Shown here: positions 6,641 to 45,561 of the stretch, piece after piece
Layout of the letters: each line of letters begins with the position of its first letter
Numbering within the stretch: the stretch's first letter is position 1
Virus record (IMG/VR): IMGVR_UViG_3300023278_002893
Coordinates: 233,726 to 297,725 of that record
Length of the DNA: 64,000 nucleotides
Strand: one strand, 5' to 3'
Position numbers and translations under genes: made by a program
Notes under the pieces: model-generated
The model's input: only the letters and a program-made list of their open reading frames with translations
What the model was told of the DNA's origin: nothing
Database searches by the model: none

Positions 6641-8407
6641 TCAAGGCTGATCTGTGACAACACTGTTAATACCCGTAGCTGTGGCCCCTGTACCCGCGGC
6701 AATATCTATAATACCGGCGTAGTCAGTTCCCACATTTGGAAAATCATCTCCGGGCTTCCAATAGTGTATCAAGCTCGCACTACTTGTATAAGTCCCAGAA
6801 TCTGTCGTGAGGTCGTAATCAAAACCTCCCGAAACTAGAGTCGGATACTGCCCCGGCTCTAGCGCTATATCCCATACCCCTATATGTCCTAAACTACCAG
6901 ACCAAGCCGCTAGCGATGGTGCTGTGTCCTCTAAGAGGTCTCCTACGCGGAGTTGACGTCCACCCGTTGGCTCGTTCATGTTGCCAGTTCCGGAAAATAA
7001 TAAGGTTTGGTCCGTGACAAGTAAGCCCTGATCGTATGCGATCAGGTTGGTCCCGTCCCAGACGCATGAGAAATTCCTCCACTGATTATGCTTCTGGATC
7101 TTATTGAAACGCGTTATACGTAATCTACGACCTAGAGAGTTTCCCAATTCTATGACAAGCTCTTCTTCATATTTGGAGTTTTCTAGTTTGGCCGCCCATA
7201 TCAATATCTCACTTCTAGGGGTGCTCCCCTTTAGGTGTAATAACGTTCTATGACTATCAATTGCTGCTTGTGGGACAAACAGGGTGGGTTTCAACCAAAA
7301 ACCAAACGTCCATGCATTCCCGATACCTATTTCTTGATTGGGGGAACTTTCTAATCTATCACTAGATCCCCCAAATTCTGTGGCTACTGAATTAGTTACC
7401 CCTACTCCCCCAGTAGTTAAACTAACCGCCCATTCTTGTGTCGCTGTCCCCGAAAGAGTAGAAGTTACAACAACTTTGAAATCCTGGCTCGGTTGTTGGC
7501 TTACATGTGGTATCCAAGCAACTGACCCTGTTGTGGGGGATATAGTCGCCCCCTCCGGATTAGTTTCGAATGTATAAGTCAAAGTCAGGTCTTCGTCGCT
7601 TCGTGCATCCACTTCATAGGTGTAAGACTGAGACGTTAGACCTGAAGTAGTTGGTATCCCTGAAATTGTTGGATCGTGGTCATTGTATTGTACTATTAGG
7701 CGGAAACCACCCCCCGCGCGATCTTCTGCATCAAAGAAAACCCGTTCTTCGTCCGACCCGTCCCCGCTACTGCTATTATACCAATCCAGGGCAAATGCGA
7801 TTCCTGAGATTGTCGGGTTTGTACCCCGCCACGCTTCTAAGTTCTCAGCAATGGCATTTGTAGGGGCGGCTGAAAGTTCAAAGTCTGGTGAATAGTCCGG
7901 ATCACCGATTGATCCTGAAGTACCCGTCAAGAAGTCACCACTGTCGTAAGTTATTGTACCTAATTCCGCCCCGCCGAAAACGCGTGATCCGCTAATAGTG
8001 TCTGATAACTCACCCGTAGGGAAAGGAAAATCAGTCGAACTTGTATAAGCCCCCCATCCTCCGGAAGTTCCTGAAAGGGGGACAGTCCAAACACCATCAT
8101 CTTCGAGCATAAACACACGGAAACTATTATCAGTATCTGTTATAACTGGATTCAGGAAGAACGTGGTCTTCCAATTAAGCTTTGCTTTAACATATGACGA
8201 CCTGTTGGGGATGATTGATAAATCATAATAAAGAAATACCGCATCCGTTGGCTCAAATCCCTTACCTCCAACAGCCCCTACCCAGAGCTGCTCGGGGGAT
8301 TCCGGGAGAGGCCAATGCGTCTCTTCATCGACATTGACGCGTACATCCCCCAAAAATCCATGACTATCACTTTCGGATACTGCGAAACTAGATTCCCGTA
8401 ATACCAT
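6641..8407 (-). CDS. putative virion/adhesion protein with Ig-like (cadherin/He_PIG-type) and LamG/concanavalin-like domains
   Basis: SYTYEVDARS...LTYTFETNPEGATISPTTGSVAW (Ig-like); WTFGFWLKP...FSCVWDGTNLIAY...WSGSLGHIGVWD (LamG-like); S/T/G-rich. Confidence 0.7.
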   Translation of the reverse strand: MVLRESSFAVSESDSHGFLGDVRVNVDEETHWPLPESPEQLWVGAVGGKGFEPTDAVFLYYDLSIIPNRSSYVKAKLNWKTTFFLNPVITDTDNSFRVFMLEDDGVWTVPLSGTSGGWGAYTSSTDFPFPTGELSDTISGSRVFGGAELGTITYDSGDFLTGTSGSIGDPDYSPDFELSAAPTNAIAENLEAWRGTNPTISGIAFALDWYNSSSGDGSDEERVFFDAEDRAGGGFRLIVQYNDHDPTISGIPTTSGLTSQSYTYEVDARSDEDLTLTYTFETNPEGATISPTTGSVAWIPHVSQQPSQDFKVVVTSTLSGTATQEWAVSLTTGGVGVTNSVATEFGGSSDRLESSPNQEIGIGNAWTFGFWLKPTLFVPQAAIDSHRTLLHLKGSTPRSEILIWAAKLENSKYEEELVIELGNSLGRRLRITRFNKIQKHNQWRNFSCVWDGTNLIAYDQGLLVTDQTLLFSGTGNMNEPTGGRQLRVGDLLEDTAPSLAAWSGSLGHIGVWDIALEPGQYPTLVSGGFDYDLTTDSGTYTSSASLIHYWKPGDDFPNVGTDYAGIIDIAAGTGATATGINSVVTDQP

Positions 8408-10858: not shown

Positions 10859-10975
10859 CTTTCTCCTCAAACCAATAATACGAGAAGTGTTCCCCCGTGT
10901 CAAGCACTATCTTCCCCTTTTCACTCGGGGTGGTTTATGATCTATATAGTGGCAAAGAAAGTGATTCCAACGAGA

Positions 10976-11004
10976 ATAATAAGAGAGAATAGAGAGGATG
11001 TCAA
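10976..11004 (-). promoter_or_regulatory. sigma70 promoter at the strand switch
   Basis: Minus-strand TTGACA (11004-10999), 17 nt, TATTAT (10981-10976). Confidence 0.75.
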
Positions 11005-11085
11005 ATAAATGACTAGGAGGTCAATATACATCTTCCCCCTTGAGATATAATGGGAGATAATATTGCCTTAGGGACCCTAGCATAG

Positions 11086-12035: not shown

Positions 12036-12064
12036 GGACCCCCCTAACGGGGGGTCCTCTTTTT
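12036..12064 (+). terminator. intrinsic terminator
   Basis: GGACCCCCC-TAAC-GGGGGGTCC followed by TCTTTTT. Confidence 0.85.
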
Positions 12065-12460: not shown

Positions 12461-12579
12461 CGGGGTGGGGTGTCCCCCTTCGGGGGTAGTTACCTCACTC
12501 TGTGAGGTAATACTTCTCTGGGTACTAGCGTACCCTTTGAAGTATTATCTTTCTCGTTAATCTCTCGAAAGGAGACTCT

Positions 12580-14156: not shown

Positions 14157-14771
14157 TACATAGCAGTACCTCTAAGTAGGGGTACTGCTAGTCCCACCCC
14201 ACCGCTTCCCGGGGGGTGGGACCTCGCTCTCTTTCTGCTATCACGCGTGCTCATTGAGAAATGAAGGACTCTGATGAGTCCTCCTTTATTGACGTTCGCT
14301 TCGCTCTCTCTCAGTTCCTCCGCTTCGCTCCCCCCTTCGCTATAGTCTCCGCATTCTCTGGATGCGGTTACTATTATAAGAGACCCTCTAACGAGGAGTC
14401 TCTTTTTTTATTGACGCGCGCTGTTGCTCGGTGGATTCGTTCGGTACTGTTCATTCGGTGGTTGATTCGTTTACTCTCATTTGTTAGGGCACCACCCCAG
14501 TAGACGAAACTAATTACGGAGATATCAATTCCTTACGGAAACGCTGATTTACTCGTCGTCGCTGTGCTCCTCGTTGTTCCTTCTTTTTTTGATCTTTCAT
14601 CTCGGTGCACCATTCGTAGAGATATCTATGGATGCACGCCCGTCGGATACGTAAGTACTTGCAATACTCCGACAGTGCTTTATCGATACGTCTAGGTAGT
14701 TCCTAGCGGACGAGATGGGAGATCTTTTTTCGCGGCCGCTCAAAAAAGCCTATTACAAGGAGATTAGAAAC

Positions 14772-19603: not shown

Positions 19604-19625
19604 GCACGACGCTCGGTAAGACTGG

Positions 19626-19655
19626 GGGGACCCCTAACGGGGTCCCCTTCTTTTT
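19626..19655 (+). terminator. intrinsic terminator
   Basis: GGGGACCCC-TAAC-GGGGTCCCC followed by TTCTTTTT. Confidence 0.85.
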
Positions 19656-23968: not shown

Positions 23969-25063
23969 ATGAATACCATCGCAGCTCTTTTGACCATACT
24001 TTGTATCGGTGATTCGATTACCGCGTGGGAGGATTCCTACTGCGATCAGTCGGTTCATCAGACCCTCAACGTAGGAGTCGATAGCACCCTCACAGAGACA
24101 TGGGCTGACCGTGCCTATTTCGATGAGTACGCTGGAACCGTGCTACTGGCTGAGAACATCGACGTTGTATCGATCCTGCTCTCGACCAATGACGCCTCTC
24201 GGGAGAAATCAGCAGAGAGCGTCGGCATGAACATGCAACTGATTATCGATTACCTGAAGGATTACGGTGTAGATAACATCGTGATCTCCCTTCCACCCTG
24301 GTTTCAGGATCCTACCAACTATTGGAGTAGCCTGTATAACCCATACTTGGTTGCGTCTCGTCCTGTTATTCTGGCAGTAATCGATGCCAATCCGGAGGTA
24401 AATCTCGGGGTAGATTGGACTGAGCTGGATTTACCCTTCCCCGAGATGTGGGAAGATCGAGTCCATCCCAACCCGGCAGGACATACGGTTGCGACGCCAT
24501 TCATGGACGCAGCGTTTGAGAGATACGTCCTGGAGCCTATCCCAGTTCCTGGGCTCAGTATAACGGCAATCAATAGCCTGACCATTATCCTCCTCGTGAT
24601 TGGGTATTACGGTTATTTGGAAAAGGCAAAAGCAGCGAGATCAAAACCTGACCGGAACTGGGTAGGAGTGCTTCCTCTTTTAGGCTCTACCATGTTGGGT
24701 CTGGTCGTCATCGCAGTTACGTTGTGGGGAAAACCCGCCCAAGGAAGGATCGACTATGCGCCTGTCTCAGCAGAACCTATCTGTCGTAATATGGCTTGGA
24801 TGTCGGGAGAAGGTATTTCCTGTGACTATGTCCCCAGTAAGGGTCAGGTACATTTGGTCTTCATCAGTTTTGAGTGGCATCTGGACTTCTGGTTAGAGCC
24901 CCTGGTGAGGCCGGTGTTGGATTCTCTTTGCGACGATCGTGCTGTTCACGAAATACGTGAAACAGTAGTGGATTTTGGATACACCCAAACTCGACTTGTT
25001 GCGTGTGATACCCGTTTGGGTGGAGCATGGAGCATCGTCGCAACAGGAGACGAAGATGAATAA
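23969..25063 (+). CDS. SGNH/GDSL hydrolase followed by an IPTL-CTERM-like segment and a second membrane-anchored domain
   Basis: ILCIGDSIT (block I), LSTNDA (block III), EDRVHPNPAGH (block V); PIPVPGLS-TM-KAKAAR. Confidence 0.8.
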   Translation: MNTIAALLTILCIGDSITAWEDSYCDQSVHQTLNVGVDSTLTETWADRAYFDEYAGTVLLAENIDVVSILLSTNDASREKSAESVGMNMQLIIDYLKDYGVDNIVISLPPWFQDPTNYWSSLYNPYLVASRPVILAVIDANPEVNLGVDWTELDLPFPEMWEDRVHPNPAGHTVATPFMDAAFERYVLEPIPVPGLSITAINSLTIILLVIGYYGYLEKAKAARSKPDRNWVGVLPLLGSTMLGLVVIAVTLWGKPAQGRIDYAPVSAEPICRNMAWMSGEGISCDYVPSKGQVHLVFISFEWHLDFWLEPLVRPVLDSLCDDRAVHEIRETVVDFGYTQTRLVACDTRLGGAWSIVATGDEDE

Positions 25064-29170: not shown

Positions 29171-29458
29171 AGTTGTTTCTGCACTTAGTGAGTTCCATGG
29201 TATCCCGAAGGTGTTTGTCCTCACCTTCCGCGTTCAAGCCGCGATCATTAGATGGGATACCAACAAGGTGGCGTACGCCGGGAGTGCCTGCATTCACTCC
29301 TGGGGTGCGCCACTAGTAGGAATATCTTTTTTTGTAAGTGTGCTGAAGATCGCGCTTATAGTTCATGCAATTCGTTCGATGATTTACACTCTGTACCATC
29401 AAGTAGTGCTAACTAGTGAGTTTGCGCGTACCTGATTGGTCTTTACTGAGGTGCCAAC

Positions 29459-30028: not shown

Positions 30029-30133
30029 AAAGGAGCAGTAAGAGGAGGTAGACGCACAGGCCAGTTCGAAATCGAAGAACAAGCGAAATGTATCGCTGAC
30101 GCGCATCATAAAGAATAAGGAGCGAGGAAATCA

Positions 30134-30988
30134 TTGACACGGGATGTTGACGAGCAGGTTGTAGAAATGAGAACGGTTGGGACGGTAGATTACGTCGATG
30201 AGATCGCTATAAGAATCGTAAAGACATACGCCACTGCCCGTTTCATCCGCGACCGCTTGATGTTTAGAGTATCTTGGACAGAGGAGGACATAGCCCAGGA
30301 AATGATCTTGGGTCTCATGGCGCAAGCCGAAACGGGACACCTACCGGCTATGCTAGGTAAGACCACTCTTGAGAGAAGGTGGATTGATGCCTTCAGAAAG
30401 CTCACTACCGATTTAGAATACCGCCGGGATGGCAACACCAAGCACGACAGGGCAGTTAGAGCAGGAGACGCCCGGCGATATAGTCGAAGCGACTTGGACG
30501 TGATAAGTCCTCAAAAGTTTGATGTCGAGAAAAGCGACAGGCGTGAAACTGCAAACAGGGGGGTGAGTGTTTTGGAATTGCTAGAAGAACAAGAAATACC
30601 CCAGACTCCCGCTGAAGAATTGCGAAAGATGTATGAAGAGGCAGGTGGATGGACGAGAGCATTCCATGATAGCCTGGATATCATCCTCGCGAAGAAGATA
30701 CATGTTGCTGCTCTTAAGCTAGCCAAGGTAAGAAGTACTACGGAAAGAGCAGTTGATGCGGTATTCGAGTGGATCAAGAATCATCCGGGAGAAAATCCCA
30801 CCAGTGAATGGTTGGGTTACGAACTCAACCTTTCGCGTGAAACAGTTATCCGGAGGTTTGCCCGTCTACGTAAGGGAGAAAAGATTACACGCGAACTCGT
30901 CGAAGATAGAGAAAGCCAAACTGAGGATAACGGTCGGGTTCGTGGTCAGTATCGTTATTTTCCCGCCGAAGAAAAACAGGAGAGGTAA
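30134..30988 (+). CDS. divergent sigma70/ECF-like factor or HTH regulator
   Basis: EEDIAQEMILGL...RRWIDAFRK resembles ECF region 2; PTSEWLGYELNLSRETVIRRFARLRK resembles the region-4 HTH. Confidence 0.55.
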   Translation: MTRDVDEQVVEMRTVGTVDYVDEIAIRIVKTYATARFIRDRLMFRVSWTEEDIAQEMILGLMAQAETGHLPAMLGKTTLERRWIDAFRKLTTDLEYRRDGNTKHDRAVRAGDARRYSRSDLDVISPQKFDVEKSDRRETANRGVSVLELLEEQEIPQTPAEELRKMYEEAGGWTRAFHDSLDIILAKKIHVAALKLAKVRSTTERAVDAVFEWIKNHPGENPTSEWLGYELNLSRETVIRRFARLRKGEKITRELVEDRESQTEDNGRVRGQYRYFPAEEKQER

Positions 30989-31044: not shown

Positions 31045-31284
31045 ATGCGGAAGATCATAAGAGTAGGGTTGTTGCTTCTGGTTGTGCTGTCATCTACAGC
31101 CCAGAAGTGCGACGATGGAATGTCGGGAGAGTCCCGCCAAGGTAATGCTGTAGGGGTGAAAGATCACTACAAGCAGATAGATAGACCGGTAAGTGCTGTC
31201 CCTGAGCCCTCAGCTTGGATAATGTTTCTGGCCGGGGGAATCATCATCTACAAGTCAGTTGGGAAAAACAAGAAGAAGGAGTAG
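31045..31284 (+). CDS. minimal PEP-CTERM protein
   Basis: Signal-like N-terminus; AVPEPSAWIMFLAGGIIIY-KSVGKNKKKE. Confidence 0.75.
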   Translation: MRKIIRVGLLLLVVLSSTAQKCDDGMSGESRQGNAVGVKDHYKQIDRPVSAVPEPSAWIMFLAGGIIIYKSVGKNKKKE

Positions 31285-31357: not shown

Positions 31358-31663
31358 TTGCCGCAGCGCAGATGGTCAGCTGTATGCGAGGGAATTGATA
31401 TGCCGGATCCAAAATCCGAAAGTGAGAAGAAACCCTTCAGAGTAGGTGATGTGTGTGAGTACGTGGGCAGTGATGGCCACTGGAGCAAACGTCACATTAT
31501 CGAAGAGTGCAAGGTTCGCGGCCCCGAATTCTTTGAGTATTGCACCTCGCAGGGTGCGTGGATTCCCCACGAGTGCTTGAAACTCACTGAGGAATCCTCG
31601 GTGGAATCCAGAGCAGAGCTTTGGAGATTGATGGTAGAAGAGTGTGAGGAACTTTCTGAGTGA
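31358..31663 (+). CDS. hypothetical protein
   Basis: KPFRVGDVCEY SH3-like start; true start may be ATG 31400. Confidence 0.55.
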   Translation: MPQRRWSAVCEGIDMPDPKSESEKKPFRVGDVCEYVGSDGHWSKRHIIEECKVRGPEFFEYCTSQGAWIPHECLKLTEESSVESRAELWRLMVEECEELSE

Positions 31664-31673
31664 GAGGAGTACC

Positions 31674-32246
31674 ATGAAAGAAATATTCGGGAATCTGTTC
31701 AAATGTGTGAAAGCCGAAGCCATCTGTATTACCACCAATGGATACGTGAAGAAGAACGGTGGTGTGGTAATGGGACGAGGATGTGCGTTGGAAGCAACCA
31801 AGCGTTGGCCCGGGGTTGAGGATCTGGTAGCACACAGCCTGAGTGGGGGTAAGAACGTCCCGACCCTGCTTACCCTGCCGCAGGAGGAGAATCCAAATAT
31901 CACTCTCCTGCCCACGCCAATGGCCAATTACATCGTTCCGTATCACGTCGTGACCTTCCCTGTGAAGCCAATCAGATGTGGTGGAGACCAGTTGTTGCCC
32001 CGTTTTCAGAACGACAACACCAGCAGGACCTCGGTTCATCCAGGGTGGATGAGCCAAGCCAAACCCTCCCTCATCCAGCACTCTGCGAAGCTCCTGGTTG
32101 AGCTGACAGACAAGCATGGGTGGAGTAGTGTCATCATACCCAAGCCGGGATGCGGAGCTGGTGGCCTCGATTGGAAGGATGTCAAGCCTTTGATAGCCGA
32201 CATTCTGGATGACAGGTTCTATCTGATCACTTTTCCAAAGAGGTAA
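31674..32246 (+). CDS. macrodomain (ADP-ribose processing, DarG/Poa1p-like)
   Basis: AICITTNG...MGRGCALEA...VVTFPVK...IPKPGCGAGGLDWKDVKPLI. Confidence 0.85.
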   Translation: MKEIFGNLFKCVKAEAICITTNGYVKKNGGVVMGRGCALEATKRWPGVEDLVAHSLSGGKNVPTLLTLPQEENPNITLLPTPMANYIVPYHVVTFPVKPIRCGGDQLLPRFQNDNTSRTSVHPGWMSQAKPSLIQHSAKLLVELTDKHGWSSVIIPKPGCGAGGLDWKDVKPLIADILDDRFYLITFPKR

Positions 32247-32342: not shown

Positions 32343-33569
32343 ATGCCCCAGGTAAAGCTGAACTCAGAACAGAAAGCCGCGCTGGATATCGCGCTCAATA
32401 CCCGTGATCATCTGTTCATCACGGGAGGGCCAGGTACTGGTAAGTCTGTCTTGATGGAGCAAATCATCAGAGGTCTCCGGCGGCAGGGAAAGAGGGTGCG
32501 AGTAGCCGGTCCGACTGGGTTGGCGGCTCTTGCTCTGCGTGGTACTACTCTTGCCCGTTTGTTGGGCACTGGTATTGCTAAGAACACTTCGGAACTGGGT
32601 AGGATGGATATTTCTCGGGCCGAAGAAAATCTACATAAGGTCACTGATCTTATCGTAGATGAGATCAGCATGGTGTCCGGAGACTATCTGAACGTGATGG
32701 ATACCGTAATGAGAGAAGCCACTGGTGAGAAGGAACCCTTCGGAGGAATTCGAATCATCCTCTGCGGTGACTTCCTTCAGCTGCCTCCAGTACATCGACG
32801 TACCGAGCCTGATCCTGAATGGAGATGGGCATTCCAACATCCACTCTTTGCACTGACCAAGAAGATCTCTCTGGTCAAGTCAATGAGACAAGCAGACCCG
32901 CTGGACATCAAGATACTCACCGAGTTGCGTCATGGTATCATCTCCCCTCAGGGCGCTGATGTAATGGCAGACATGGTGGGGCGGCAGCTCAAACTCCCGA
33001 CCGAACTCTATCCCATCAACAAGACAGTGCATGAGATCAACGCCGAGCGATTGGCAGCACTGAAAGGGAAAGAGAAGGTGTATCGAACAGGGTATTCGCC
33101 TGGGAAATACAAGAACGTATTCGTAGATCAGGTTCCCATTGGAGAGAGGGTTGTTCTCAAGGTGGGTGTTCCGGTGATTATTCTAGCGAATAACCCCGCC
33201 CAGAGATACGCCAATGGTTCCCAAGGTGTTGTTGTTTCGATGGATTTTGATCGAGTTCGGGTGAAGCTTTCTGCTAACCGGATGGTCTCGGTTGAGAAGA
33301 AGGTATGGGAAATCACCGATGCGCGAGGTAATCGCATGGGTGAGGTGGAAGGTCTTCCGGTCCATCTCGGATGGGCTGCTACCATTCATCGTGCTCAGGG
33401 TATGACTTTGAACGAGGTGAAGACAGATATATCCAAGTGCTTTGAACCAGGTCAGGCATGTGTTGGTATGTCCAGGACGAGAAGTCTCAGCAACATCTCT
33501 CTCACCGCGCCGGTAACAGAGTTTCAAGTAGATTCAGATGCACTCAAGTTCATGATGAGCATGACATAA
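32343..33569 (+). CDS. PIF1-family SF1B DNA helicase
   Basis: FITGGPGTGKS, LIVDEISMV, FGGIRIILCGDFLQLPPV, MRQ, NGSQG, LGWAATIHRAQGMTL, VGMSRTR. Confidence 0.95.
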   Translation: MPQVKLNSEQKAALDIALNTRDHLFITGGPGTGKSVLMEQIIRGLRRQGKRVRVAGPTGLAALALRGTTLARLLGTGIAKNTSELGRMDISRAEENLHKVTDLIVDEISMVSGDYLNVMDTVMREATGEKEPFGGIRIILCGDFLQLPPVHRRTEPDPEWRWAFQHPLFALTKKISLVKSMRQADPLDIKILTELRHGIISPQGADVMADMVGRQLKLPTELYPINKTVHEINAERLAALKGKEKVYRTGYSPGKYKNVFVDQVPIGERVVLKVGVPVIILANNPAQRYANGSQGVVVSMDFDRVRVKLSANRMVSVEKKVWEITDARGNRMGEVEGLPVHLGWAATIHRAQGMTLNEVKTDISKCFEPGQACVGMSRTRSLSNISLTAPVTEFQVDSDALKFMMSMT

Positions 33570-43927: not shown

Positions 43928-44230
43928 ATGAGTGAGATGCGACTGCAGGAGGTGTCTCTGATCGGACGGATGAAGAGCGATCCGATCTCCACGGACAGCA
44001 AGGAATGTTATTTCAAGATCGATGCTGGGGGTAATCTTCCCTTCCCCTGCTTTTGTAACGGAAAGACTGCCGAGAACGCAACCAAGTTCCTGAAGGACGG
44101 GGATGAGGTTGCGATCGAGGGTAAGCTACACATGAAGCAGTTCAGGGGTGAAAAGCAACCCATACTGCTTGTATTTGCGAGGCACATTAGTTATGGCAGG
44201 AAGACGCACTCGTTGGTATCCAACTATTAG
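43928..44230 (+). CDS. short SSB/PriB-like OB-fold protein
   Basis: VSLIGRM..DP...PCFCNGKTAENATKFLKDGDEVAIEGKL; no acidic tail. Confidence 0.75.
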   Translation: MSEMRLQEVSLIGRMKSDPISTDSKECYFKIDAGGNLPFPCFCNGKTAENATKFLKDGDEVAIEGKLHMKQFRGEKQPILLVFARHISYGRKTHSLVSNY

Positions 44231-44346
44231 CGGAATCTTTGCGATCTATATAGGTGTGGATGCTCTAAATTATTCTGGAATAAAGGGTCTAATTCTTTGG
44301 CCCTTCTTATTATTAGCTTGGGCGGTATCGTACAAAGTATATTTAT

Positions 44347-44844
44347 TTGTCTGTGAAGGCGATGAGGAAATTATTTATGAAACCAAAGGTAATGGTGGAG
44401 GATCGGGAGAATCTGAGGCTGGTATCGCTCGTCCGAAAGATAGACGAATACCTTCTGCAGCGCCAAACAGCGGAAATCTTCGGACAGCAAGCCGAATCAC
44501 GAGCCGGATTATCGGAGAGGTTGCCCAACGGCAATCTCTTCGTACAAAAGAAGCTGAGTCACGGACTTCGGATTCGAGCCGAGATAGAGAACGACAAACA
44601 GACCGTGACTTTGCGGATTTTCTTAGATCCTCTTAGATTCAATAATTGGACTAAAGCCTTAGGGCCGGTGGAGTTCTTTTATATGGATCCTTTTGGAGTG
44701 GAAGTTTATTTTAAGGCTGGTAAATGGGCGATATCTATAGATAAGAAGGTAGTTCCTTTCAAGAACACCAACGAAATCTATGAAATGGCCCGCATTGAAG
44801 TCCAGACCAGAGGTAATGCACGGAAGCTAGTGCGTGTAGCCTAG
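44347..44844 (+). CDS. hypothetical protein
   Basis: Co-directional; start uncertain. Confidence 0.5.
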   Translation: MSVKAMRKLFMKPKVMVEDRENLRLVSLVRKIDEYLLQRQTAEIFGQQAESRAGLSERLPNGNLFVQKKLSHGLRIRAEIENDKQTVTLRIFLDPLRFNNWTKALGPVEFFYMDPFGVEVYFKAGKWAISIDKKVVPFKNTNEIYEMARIEVQTRGNARKLVRVA

Positions 44845-44853
44845 GAGGTCTCC

Positions 44854-45561
44854 GTGGAAAAATGCAGACCTATTATTTTCTTGATCTTATTAGGATCGTC
44901 TTTGTTTGCGCTCTATTCGAACAGAAGACAGCCTGAGATTATACCCCCATCCCTCATCGAAGAACCAAAACTCCGGTGGTCAGAGCTATCCTTTGAATAC
45001 CGGTTCGTGGTAATGAGTGAGCTTCGTGCAAACCACTTAGTGAAGATCTGCCATGCAGATCCTGAACTAGCATCCCGTATAGTAGCTGCGGTGGAAGAGG
45101 GCGCCGAACTATACAGCTTGGATATCGATCTCGTTCTGGGTCTTATCCTGGTGGAATCTCACTGCTCTCCCGAAGCCGTGAGTTTTATGGGAGCACTGGG
45201 GCTGATGCAGGTCATGCCCGCAACTGGGAAGTTCATCTCACACTCGTTGGGATTCAAATGGTCAGGTGATGGGGTTCTTCGGGCGATAGAAAGCAACATC
45301 GCTTATGGAACTTGGTATCTACATTACTTACGGACACGCTTTCCGAAAAACGAACATGCTGTTATCGCCTCCTATAATTGGGGGCCGGAACACATACAAG
45401 GAAGGATAAATCGATCCGAGCCTCTTCCCCAAGTTTATCCGGGGAAAGTGTATGAAGCCACAGAAAAACTCCGTCAATATATCTGGAGCGACGAATACAA
45501 TAAGATATATTGGCAAGGTGTGGATAAATACATCGAGAACGCTCGAAGAGAGGGAAGATAA
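44854..45561 (+). CDS. membrane-anchored SLT lytic transglycosylase
   Basis: LILVES (catalytic Glu), GALGLMQVMPATG, NIAYGTWYL, ASYNWGP; N-terminal TM. Confidence 0.9.
   Translation: MEKCRPIIFLILLGSSLFALYSNRRQPEIIPPSLIEEPKLRWSELSFEYRFVVMSELRANHLVKICHADPELASRIVAAVEEGAELYSLDIDLVLGLILVESHCSPEAVSFMGALGLMQVMPATGKFISHSLGFKWSGDGVLRAIESNIAYGTWYLHYLRTRFPKNEHAVIASYNWGPEHIQGRINRSEPLPQVYPGKVYEATEKLRQYIWSDEYNKIYWQGVDKYIENARREGR

What the first reader, a model, noticed from the sequence alone, without database searches (positions are those of the whole stretch)
30134..30988. Divergent sigma-like factor, candidate reader of the TWGTT box
Seen: region-2-like (EDIAQE...WIDAFRK) and region-4-like HTH segments separated by a long linker. 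Established: large phages encode sigma factors for middle/late transcription. Inference: it may recognise the repeated box, since genes behind the box lack canonical sigma70 promoters.
Basis: inference. Interest (0 to 1): 0.6.

Follow-up and report, generated by a model that had tools for sequence, protein, structure and literature searches.

The report
Sigma-like phage factor with winged helix
A jumbo-phage accessory gene encodes a rare two-domain protein whose front end looks like the RNA-polymerase-docking domain of sigma factors and whose back end is a winged-helix DNA binder, but a related phage keeps the nearby repeated DNA box without this gene, so it is probably not the box's required reader.

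Summary
The ORF is real: 30134-30988 (+), 284 aa, TTG start. It lies in a 297.7 kb uncultured jumbo phage. Both quoted motifs are present (EDIAQE 51-56, WIDAFRK 83-89), as are a disordered linker (95-145) and a C-terminal HTH.

No sequence profile calls it a sigma factor. An exhaustive search found only six relatives.

The N-terminal three-helix domain folds confidently. Its nearest shapes and language-model neighbours are overwhelmingly sigma region 2 domains. A docking test on the beta' clamp helices gave weak support (0.60; best control 0.00).

I read it as a sigma-like or RNAP-tethered transcription factor of a new variant type. The closest precedents in concept are sigma-I and AR9 gp226.

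The "TWGTT box" is real: about 17 plus-strand intergenic copies of TWGTT followed by a 7-bp/3-nt-loop hairpin, each 55-130 nt upstream of a gene. However, homologous boxes sit at orthologous positions in a syntenic, complete relative that has no homologue of this protein. The genome also encodes a canonical sigma factor and a single-chain beta-beta' RNAP. The box-reader claim is therefore not supported.

The parts
30117..30129 (+). Purine-rich ribosome-binding stretch (AAGGAG...GAGGAA) ahead of the TTG start
   Evidence: Read directly from the sequence. Spacing to the TTG at 30134 is 4-11 nt.
30134..30988 (+). Gene for the 284-aa protein P0001 (TTG start, TAA stop)
   Evidence: ORF list, translation, codon-usage score 35.8, homologues with a conserved N-terminus.
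30191..30433 (+). N-terminal three-helix sigma2-like domain (residues ~20-100). Includes EDIAQE (51-56, nt 30284-30301), the invariant G68/L70 loop and WIDAFRK (83-89, nt 30380-30400).
   Evidence: AF2 pLDDT is above 90 over 66 residues with pTM 0.72. Sigma2 domains dominate the nearest shapes and the feature neighbours. The only hhalign local alignment falls on sigma regions 1.2/2.1, but it is not significant. Docking on E. coli beta' 240-345 scored 0.60 against a best control of 0.00, which is weak support.
30416..30568 (+). Predicted disordered, charged linker (residues 95-145), variable in length among homologues
   Evidence: pLDDT below 50. This is the gap-rich part of alignment A1.
30569..30781 (+). 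Conserved acidic helical segment (residues 146-216). Contains the family block P-x-T-P-A-E-x-L-R-x-x-F-E-x-E-G-x-L-W-T-x-x-F-H and a long helix (175-216) that leads into the winged helix.
   Evidence: Invariant E148, E168, G171, W173, T174 and F177. Helices 146-152, 159-170 and 175-216. Crp/CooA-type alignments span 158-281. Its function was not tested.
30725..30976 (+). C-terminal winged helix-turn-helix (residues ~198-281): HTH helices 224-231 and 235-247 (nt 30803-30874), wing strands 251-255 and 273-277

Best explanation
P0001 is an accessory jumbo-phage transcription factor built like a sigma factor whose promoter-reading C-terminal domain has been replaced.

Proposed mechanism:
- The N-terminal three-helix domain is of the sigma region-2 type and docks on the clamp helices of an RNA polymerase beta' subunit. 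The polymerase could be the host enzyme or, possibly, the phage's own single-chain beta-beta' enzyme.
- A ~50-residue flexible linker and a conserved acidic helical segment follow.
- A C-terminal MarR/Crp-type winged helix binds duplex DNA upstream.
- Together these would direct or tether RNA polymerase to a small set of promoters, either as an alternative specificity subunit or as an RNAP-bound activator.

Shown: the gene, its small family, and the folds of both domains.
Inferred: RNAP docking (weak in-silico support only), DNA binding, and the target sites.

It is probably not the obligatory reader of the TWGTT box, because that box persists in a relative that lacks the gene.
For: - The ORF is real and conserved.
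- N-domain model: pLDDT 83, pTM 0.72.
- ESM-Atlas shape search: 8 of 10 nearest family sets are sigma70/ECF clusters, with 83-92 of 101 residues aligned and rmsd 3.2-4.2 A.
- Feature search of residues 12-112: 26 of 30 named neighbours carry Sigma70_r2, score 0.95. The whole-protein feature search also found viral Sigma70_r2 clusters.
- PDB-wide VIA-align: about 10-12 sigma2 domains in the top 50 (ShbA with 87 residues aligned, SigR-N, sigmaE r2, CnrH, SigC, sigma28, sigB). AR9 nvRNAP chain A, residues 132-266, also appears; this 463-residue chain is taken to be gp226 (464 aa) on length, and the matched range lies within the gp226 NTD, which holds its sigma2-like helices (PMC9209446).
- The Foldseek rows with the best TM and rmsd are sigmaE region 2.
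- Docking on E. coli beta' 240-345: 0.60 in three runs (0.57-0.62), best of 3 controls 0.00, verdict 'weak support'.
- C-terminal winged helix.
- Precedent for a sigma with a winged-HTH-like -35 reader: sigma-I (PMC10575876).
Against: - No sequence-profile evidence. There is no Sigma70_r2/r4/ECF hit in Pfam, NCBIfam or PHROGs for any of 7 members. No sigma factor appears in PDB profile searches. hhalign against a sigma alignment gives probability ~1%.
- All Foldseek E-values exceed 0.4.
- The complex verdict is explicitly weak, and it may reflect the model's memory of sigma2-beta' complexes.
- The gene is absent from a syntenic complete relative. It sits at a different locus in another relative. 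This is unlike a core stage-specific sigma factor.
- The long helix followed by a winged helix resembles dimeric Crp-type regulators.
Confidence: 0.5

Rival explanations
1. An ordinary phage winged-helix transcription regulator (repressor or activator). It would dimerise through the long helix 175-216 and bind a palindromic operator. The N-terminal three-helix domain would be an oligomerisation or partner-binding module whose resemblance to sigma2 is only a common helical arrangement.
Against: Sigma2 domains are strongly enriched among the nearest shapes and feature neighbours. Predicted docking on the beta' clamp helices scored 0.60 with controls at 0.00. The architecture (wHTH at the extreme C-terminus after a 50-residue disordered linker) matches neither MarR nor Crp.
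Confidence: 0.3
2. One reading: P0001 is the dedicated specificity factor that reads the TWGTT box and so drives the genes behind it.
For: - The gene lies in the middle of the box-bearing region (boxes at window 11083-43051).
- A weak box at 29173 precedes its operon.
- Full box-plus-hairpin copies are abundant in G000 (13 forward, 1 reverse; controls 0/0) and essentially absent from G003, which lacks the gene.
- The apical TCAC-N3-GTGA palindrome could suit a dimeric winged helix.
- Sigma70-type promoter matches are not enriched in the region (9 found, 16.5 expected).
Against: - Homologous boxes (GTAKTTTCTCC...TGA) stand 80-120 nt upstream of the G003 orthologues of three of the four box-preceded genes compared. 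The pattern occurs 4 forward, 0 reverse, with controls 0/0.
- G003 has no family member at E<=1 and no similar ORF in the syntenic gap.
- Conservation is one contiguous ~24-nt block with covarying stem positions, which points to a nucleic-acid hairpin rather than a bipartite sigma promoter.
- No comparable box occurs on contigs of other family members.
- Other candidate readers exist: a canonical sigma factor and a single-chain RNAP.
Confidence: 0.15
3. A sigma mimic used for host take-over. The sigma2-like domain would occupy the beta' clamp helices to displace host sigma factors (inhibition rather than redirection). The winged helix would play an auxiliary role.
For: The same fold and docking evidence as for the best explanation. 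The gene lies among small early-type accessory genes.
Against: The winged helix carries strongly conserved recognition-helix and wing residues (R235, E236, R240, G271, Y275). That argues for a DNA-reading function under selection. There is no direct evidence of inhibition.
Confidence: 0.1

Closest known systems
ECF (group 4) sigma70-family factors, e.g. E. coli sigmaE, S. coelicolor SigR and ShbA
   Different: No Sigma70_r2, r4 or ECF profile match. The C-terminal domain is a winged helix rather than sigma4. The linker is much longer and is followed by an extra conserved acidic helical block.
Sigma-I factors (SigI of Bacilli/Clostridia)
   Same: A sigma2 domain is combined with a non-sigma4 C-terminal domain whose major-groove reading resembles winged HTH domains (PMC10575876).
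   Different: No NCBIfam or Pfam match to sigma-I. SigI keeps a recognisable Sigma70_r2 and P0001 does not. Here the C-domain is detectably homologous to MarR/Crp winged helices.
AR9 gp226 / phiKZ gp68, promoter-specificity subunits of jumbo-phage non-virion RNAPs
   Different: gp226 is 464 aa with different NTD and CTD folds, and it serves a split multisubunit phage RNAP. This phage instead has a single-chain beta-beta' ORF plus a canonical sigma factor.
MarR / Crp-FNR winged-helix regulators
   Same: The C-terminal domain matches them by profile and by fold. A long helix precedes the wHTH, as in Crp.
   Different: There is no cNMP-binding beta-roll and no MarR-type dimer helices flanking the wHTH. 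The N-terminal sigma2-like domain and the disordered linker are foreign to both families.

Membership tests
Sigma70 family (including ECF group 4) | Region 2 detectable by family profile (Pfam Sigma70_r2 / Sigma70_ECF; NCBIfam sigma models) | tested here: not met
   There is no hit at E<=10 for P0001 and none at E<=1 in any of 7 members. A six-frame genome search with PF04542 finds only the canonical sigma factor elsewhere. hhalign against a sigma alignment gives P 0.04-0.1.
Sigma70 family (including ECF group 4) | Sigma2 domain fold | tested here: met
Sigma70 family (including ECF group 4) | Region 4 (wingless HTH; Sigma70_r4 / r4_2) reading the -35 element | tested here: not met
   The C-terminal domain matches HTH_Crp_2 and MarR and has a beta-hairpin wing. 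No r4 profile hit was found.
Sigma70 family (including ECF group 4) | Binding of sigma2 to the beta' clamp helices of core RNAP | tested here: inconclusive
   Complex prediction with E. coli beta' 240-345 scored 0.60 (three runs 0.57-0.62). The best of 3 controls was 0.00 and the verdict was 'weak support'. The host and its RNAP are unknown.
Sigma70 family (including ECF group 4) | Confers promoter-specific initiation on core RNAP | not testable with these tools
   This needs in vitro transcription. No sequencing run was listed for this phage.
Sigma-I subfamily | Match to sigma-I models (recognisable sigma2 plus SigI C-domain) | tested here: not met
   No NCBIfam or Pfam hit. The likeness is conceptual only.
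MarR family | Winged helix-turn-helix DNA-binding domain | tested here: met
MarR family | ~150-aa architecture with N- and C-terminal dimerisation helices flanking a central wHTH | tested here: not met
   The wHTH is at the extreme C-terminus of a 284-aa protein, after a separate N-domain and a disordered linker.
Crp/FNR family | N-terminal cyclic-nucleotide-binding beta-roll ahead of the dimer helix and wHTH | tested here: not met
   The N-terminal domain is all-helical. There is no cNMP_binding hit.
AR9 gp226 / phiKZ gp68 specificity subunits | Large NTD plus gp68-like CTD, partnered with a split multisubunit phage RNAP | tested here: not met

The most novel reading that the evidence does not exclude
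P0001 founds a previously undescribed class of initiation factor. In this class a sigma2-type core-docking domain is joined by a long flexible linker to a MarR/Crp-type winged helix in place of sigma4. Such a factor would give RNA polymerase (the host enzyme or the phage's single-chain beta-beta' enzyme) a new promoter-recognition geometry. It would be an accessory, horizontally mobile sigma module in jumbo phages.
Probability: 0.3. Interest if true: 0.7.

Novelty: new variant of a known kind. Interest (0 to 1): 0.45.

Why it matters
Sigma factors are defined by a conserved sigma2/sigma4 pair. Cases where one domain has been swapped (sigma-I, AR9 gp226) show how promoter recognition can be re-invented. 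If P0001 is a sigma2 domain fused to a bona fide MarR/Crp winged helix, it would be a clean natural example of modular exchange between the sigma and classical-regulator worlds. It would also be invisible to all current profile libraries.

There is a practical lesson as well. Standard profile-based annotation would see only a weak HTH match here, which suggests that phage genomes may hide more sigma-like factors than profiles reveal.

The negative result also matters. The conserved box-hairpin upstream of about 17 genes needs a different reader, and that makes the canonical phage sigma factor and the single-chain RNAP the candidates to test.

Tried and rejected
- Word-index protein search, with the single sequence and with a profile: only the protein itself and P0008 were found.
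- GenBank phage tblastn with P0001, and with the canonical sigma factor: no match.
- IMG/VR scan: only an identical copy on a 196.6 kb record of the same phage.
- PDB sequence and profile searches of the N-domain: nothing relevant.
- Foldseek against PDB and BFVD: no hit at E<0.1 for the N-domain.
- hhalign against a sigma alignment: not significant.
- P0007 (1195 aa) from the exhaustive search: rejected as a relative, because only a short repeated W..NHPG..P motif matches.
- A conserved partner gene downstream (the 128-aa ORFs after P0002 and P0008): these are unrelated to each other and absent from this genome.
- The box on contigs of other family members: none found. The 122-nt perfect repeat in L009 looks like a duplicated promoter/operator region and shows no demonstrable link.
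- Box as intrinsic terminator: rejected. It has no T-run, and the phage uses GC-rich hairpins with T-runs elsewhere.
- Rfam: no family over the box region apart from the tRNAs.
- Public sequencing runs: none was listed.
- T7-like RNAP search: uninformative, because the control did not ring.

Full report
**Setting.** The window is the last 64 kb (233,726-297,725) of a 297,725-bp IMG/VR virus record rated complete. It is an uncultured jumbo phage of about 50% GC with 15 tRNA genes in the window. An identical copy of the target lies on a 196.6 kb record that is evidently the same phage. Neither the target nor the phage's canonical sigma factor matches any GenBank phage.

**The observation.** The ORF is exactly as described: 30134-30988 on the plus strand, 284 aa, with a TTG start. 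A purine-rich ribosome-binding stretch lies at 30117-30129. The first residues are conserved in homologues, which supports the TTG start. EDIAQE is residues 51-56 and WIDAFRK is residues 83-89. The AlphaFold model shows four parts:
- three N-terminal helices (23-39, 50-67, 76-101; pLDDT 80-90);
- a disordered stretch (95-145);
- further helices (146-152, 159-170, 175-216);
- a C-terminal HTH (224-231, 235-247) followed by two strands (251-255, 273-277).

**Relatives.** The word-index search found nothing but the protein itself. The exhaustive HMMER scan of 1.84 billion representatives found six true relatives (E 4.5e-30 to 8.6e-6, 23-37% identity, 237-304 aa) and one spurious repeat protein. 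The family conserves three blocks:
- an N-terminal block: W-T-E-x-D-L-x-x-E-M-I-L ... G-T-L-P ... R-x-I-D-A-x-R-K;
- a central acidic block: P-x-T-P-A-E-x-L-R-x-x-F-E-x-E-G-x-L-W-T-x-x-F-H;
- a C-terminal block: W-I-x-x-N-P-G-x-x-P-T ... R-E-T-V-x-R ... G-x-W-x-Y.

Members sit on short metagenomic contigs. One (P0002) is flanked by genes whose homologues lie at 4.6-9.1 kb of this phage's genome, so the gene occupies a different locus in that relative. Another (P0008) follows a Rep_O/helicase module in a smaller phage. No conserved neighbouring partner gene exists.

**Is the N-terminal domain sigma region 2?** Sequence profiles say no.
- There is no Sigma70_r2 or ECF match in Pfam, NCBIfam or PHROGs.
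- No sigma factor appears in PDB profile searches.
- hhalign against an alignment of this phage's own canonical sigma family gives P 0.04-0.1. The single local alignment does fall in the expected register, with helix 1 plus WTEEDIAQEMIL against sigma 1.2/2.1.

Structure and language-model evidence say yes, consistently.
- Folded alone, the domain is confident (pLDDT 83, pTM 0.72).
- In the ESM-Atlas shape search, 8 of 10 nearest family sets are sigma70/ECF clusters (TM by query 0.54-0.61, 83-92 of 101 residues, rmsd 3.2-4.2 A).
- The Foldseek rows with the best TM and rmsd are sigmaE region 2, but they are not significant.
- Feature search of residues 12-112 returns Sigma70_r2 clusters in 26 of 30 named neighbours, at score 0.95.
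- The one complex job docked the N-domain on E. coli beta' 240-345 with a score of 0.60 in three runs (0.57-0.62), against 0.00 for the best of three controls. The tool calls this 'weak support' and warns that it may reflect memory of solved sigma2-beta' complexes.

I conclude that the N-domain is of the sigma2 structural type. Homology is plausible but unproven, and RNAP docking is an inference.

**What the protein most likely is.** It is a sigma-like or RNAP-tethered transcription factor: a sigma2-type domain, a long flexible linker, an acidic helical block and a MarR/Crp-type winged helix. It fails membership of the sigma70 family on two tested defining features, the region 2 profile and region 4. 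I therefore file it as working like a sigma factor, not as a member. The closest concepts are:
- sigma-I, whose C-domain reads DNA in a winged-HTH-like way (PMC10575876);
- AR9 gp226, in which the sigma core elements are kept and the periphery is replaced.

The main rival is an ordinary dimeric winged-helix regulator whose N-domain only happens to share the three-helix arrangement.

**The box.** The 'TWGTT box' is real and more specific than first described. It consists of T[AT]GTT followed at once by a 7-nt arm (..TCAC), a 3-nt loop (TTY) and the complementary arm (GTGA..).
- Clean copies lie at window 11083, 11177, 11672, 12175, 12487, 13112, 13447, 13703, 18941, 20650, 25468, 39556 and 43051.
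- Weaker copies lie at 14574, 17115, 29173 and 38287.
- All are on the plus strand and nearly all are intergenic.
- The structured pattern occurs 13 times forward and once in reverse, against 0/0 for the reversed control.
- The hairpin is supported: 79.5% of cells are paired against 20-45% for slid controls, and covariation is 0.36 against 0.17 in shuffles (0 of 500). Some sites were picked with a hairpin filter, which is a caveat.
- Conservation is one contiguous block of about 24 nt, with no second element at sigma70-like spacing.
- Each box lies 55-130 nt upstream of a Shine-Dalgarno sequence and start codon.
- No T-run follows. The phage's real terminators are GC-rich hairpins with T-runs (32 found, 15.3 expected). 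Sigma70-type promoter matches are not enriched (9 found, 16.5 expected).
- Rfam has nothing over the region except the tRNAs.

**Is P0001 the box's reader?** The gene lies inside the box region, and a weak box precedes its operon. The comparative test, however, goes against the idea.
- G003 is a complete 295.8 kb relative that shares 208 of 321 crude genes and is syntenic across this region. The 28478 ORF maps to 44.3-44.8 kb, the macro-domain gene to 46.1 kb and the PIF1 helicase to 48.4 kb.
- G003 has no family member at E<=1 and no comparable ORF in the syntenic gap.
- Yet homologous boxes stand upstream of the orthologues of three of the four box-preceded genes compared (19034, 38416, 39668). 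They share the consensus GTAKTTTCTCC...TGA, and that pattern occurs 4 times forward, 0 reverse, with controls 0/0. The hairpin's 3' arm is not kept there.
- A box that persists without the protein argues for a conserved reader.
- The genome offers two candidates: a canonical sigma70-family factor at G000 44073-44909, conserved across many large phage contigs, and a 1054-aa single-chain ORF with both beta- and beta'-type double-psi barrels.

Only one informative genome pair was available, so I rate the box-reader model at about 0.15 rather than zero.

**Limits.** The host is unknown. No sequencing run was listed, so there is no expression or 5'-end evidence. The family alignment has only seven sequences. 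Every piece of sigma2 evidence comes from predicted structure or a language model.

Noticed in passing
window 11083-43075 (+): box starts at 11083, 11177, 11672, 12175, 12487, 13112, 13447, 13703, 14574, 17115, 18941, 20650, 25468, 29173, 38287, 39556, 43051: A conserved ~24-nt element: TWGTT plus a 7-bp stem and 3-nt loop hairpin with covarying stem base. It lies 55-130 nt upstream of about 17 plus-strand genes. Diverged homologues, without the hairpin, sit at orthologous positions in the relative G003. A purine run upstream (GAAGGAA / GAGAGAA) could pair with the TTTCTYC arm as an alternative hairpin in both phages.
   Followed up: partly
G000:C1:26734-29895 (+), outside the window (L024:1235-4396): A single 1054-aa ORF carries both a beta-type (Rpb2_6, residues 357-467) and a beta'-type (Rpb1_2, residues 752-826) double-psi barrel. 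This is a compact single-chain RNA polymerase, like crAss gp66 or YonO in concept, but it is recognisable by cellular RNAP profiles. A box-like site (PWM 18.5) lies ~850 nt upstream at G000 25881.
   Followed up: partly
G000:C1:44073-44909 (+), outside the window (L002:1402-2238): A canonical sigma70-family factor (278 aa; Sigma70_r2 34 bits, r4 29.5 bits) lies directly after a RuvB-like AAA ORF. It has more than 140 relatives, many on contigs of 190-320 kb, so it is a core gene of an uncultured jumbo-phage clade.
   Followed up: partly
window 10875-11004 (-): Two near-consensus sigma70-type promoters (TTGACA-17-TATTAT, 11 of 12 matches) lie 101 bp apart on the minus strand. They sit at the point where gene orientation switches from minus to plus. 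They are candidate host-RNAP early promoters for the leftward genes.
   Followed up: no
window 12036-12057, 19624-19649 and the hairpins abutting the boxes at 12487, 13447, 13703: GC-rich C/G-tract hairpins act as terminator-like elements, and several end immediately before a box. The CCTAACGG form at 12036 and 19624 carries a T-run. The forms abutting the boxes at 12487, 13447 and 13703 (CCCCC-TTCG-GGGGG, TCCCC-TTCG-GGGA, CCCCCC-TAC-GGGGGG) have no T-run. The arrangement suggests repeated terminator-promoter cassettes.
   Followed up: no
window 41048-63466 (+): An array of 15 tRNA genes (Gln x2, Leu x2, Arg x3, Thr, Lys, Met x2, Asp, Glu x2, Ser) is interspersed with small ORFs.
   Followed up: no
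window 23969-25063, 31045-31284, 31644-32246, 32343-33569 (+): Neighbouring genes are a GDSL-type lipase/acylhydrolase, a 79-aa ORF with a weak PEP-CTERM-like motif (below Pfam's cut-off), a macro-domain protein and a PIF1-type helicase. The other neighbours have no family match.
   Followed up: partly
L009:2155-2276 and 7522-7643: The contig carrying family member P0008 has a 122-nt perfect direct repeat in two intergenic regions. The repeat contains a sigma70-like promoter with a 6-bp/3-nt-loop palindrome in its spacer. One copy lies ahead of the operon that includes P0008 and one lies just after it.
   Followed up: partly
P0007 (1195 aa): A helicase-like protein carries six or more tandem repeats of a motif (EQWCRNHPGQTP...) that resembles the W-I-x-N-H-P-G-x-x-P-T start of the winged helix in P0001. 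It could be a shared short module or a coincidence.
   Followed up: no
G001 (IMGVR_UViG_3300023278_003531, 196,567 bp): A second IMG/VR record carries the same phage sequence, with the identical protein and the same boxes at a constant offset. It is classed as a 'provirus' at 66% completeness, which is probably a classification artefact.
   Followed up: no
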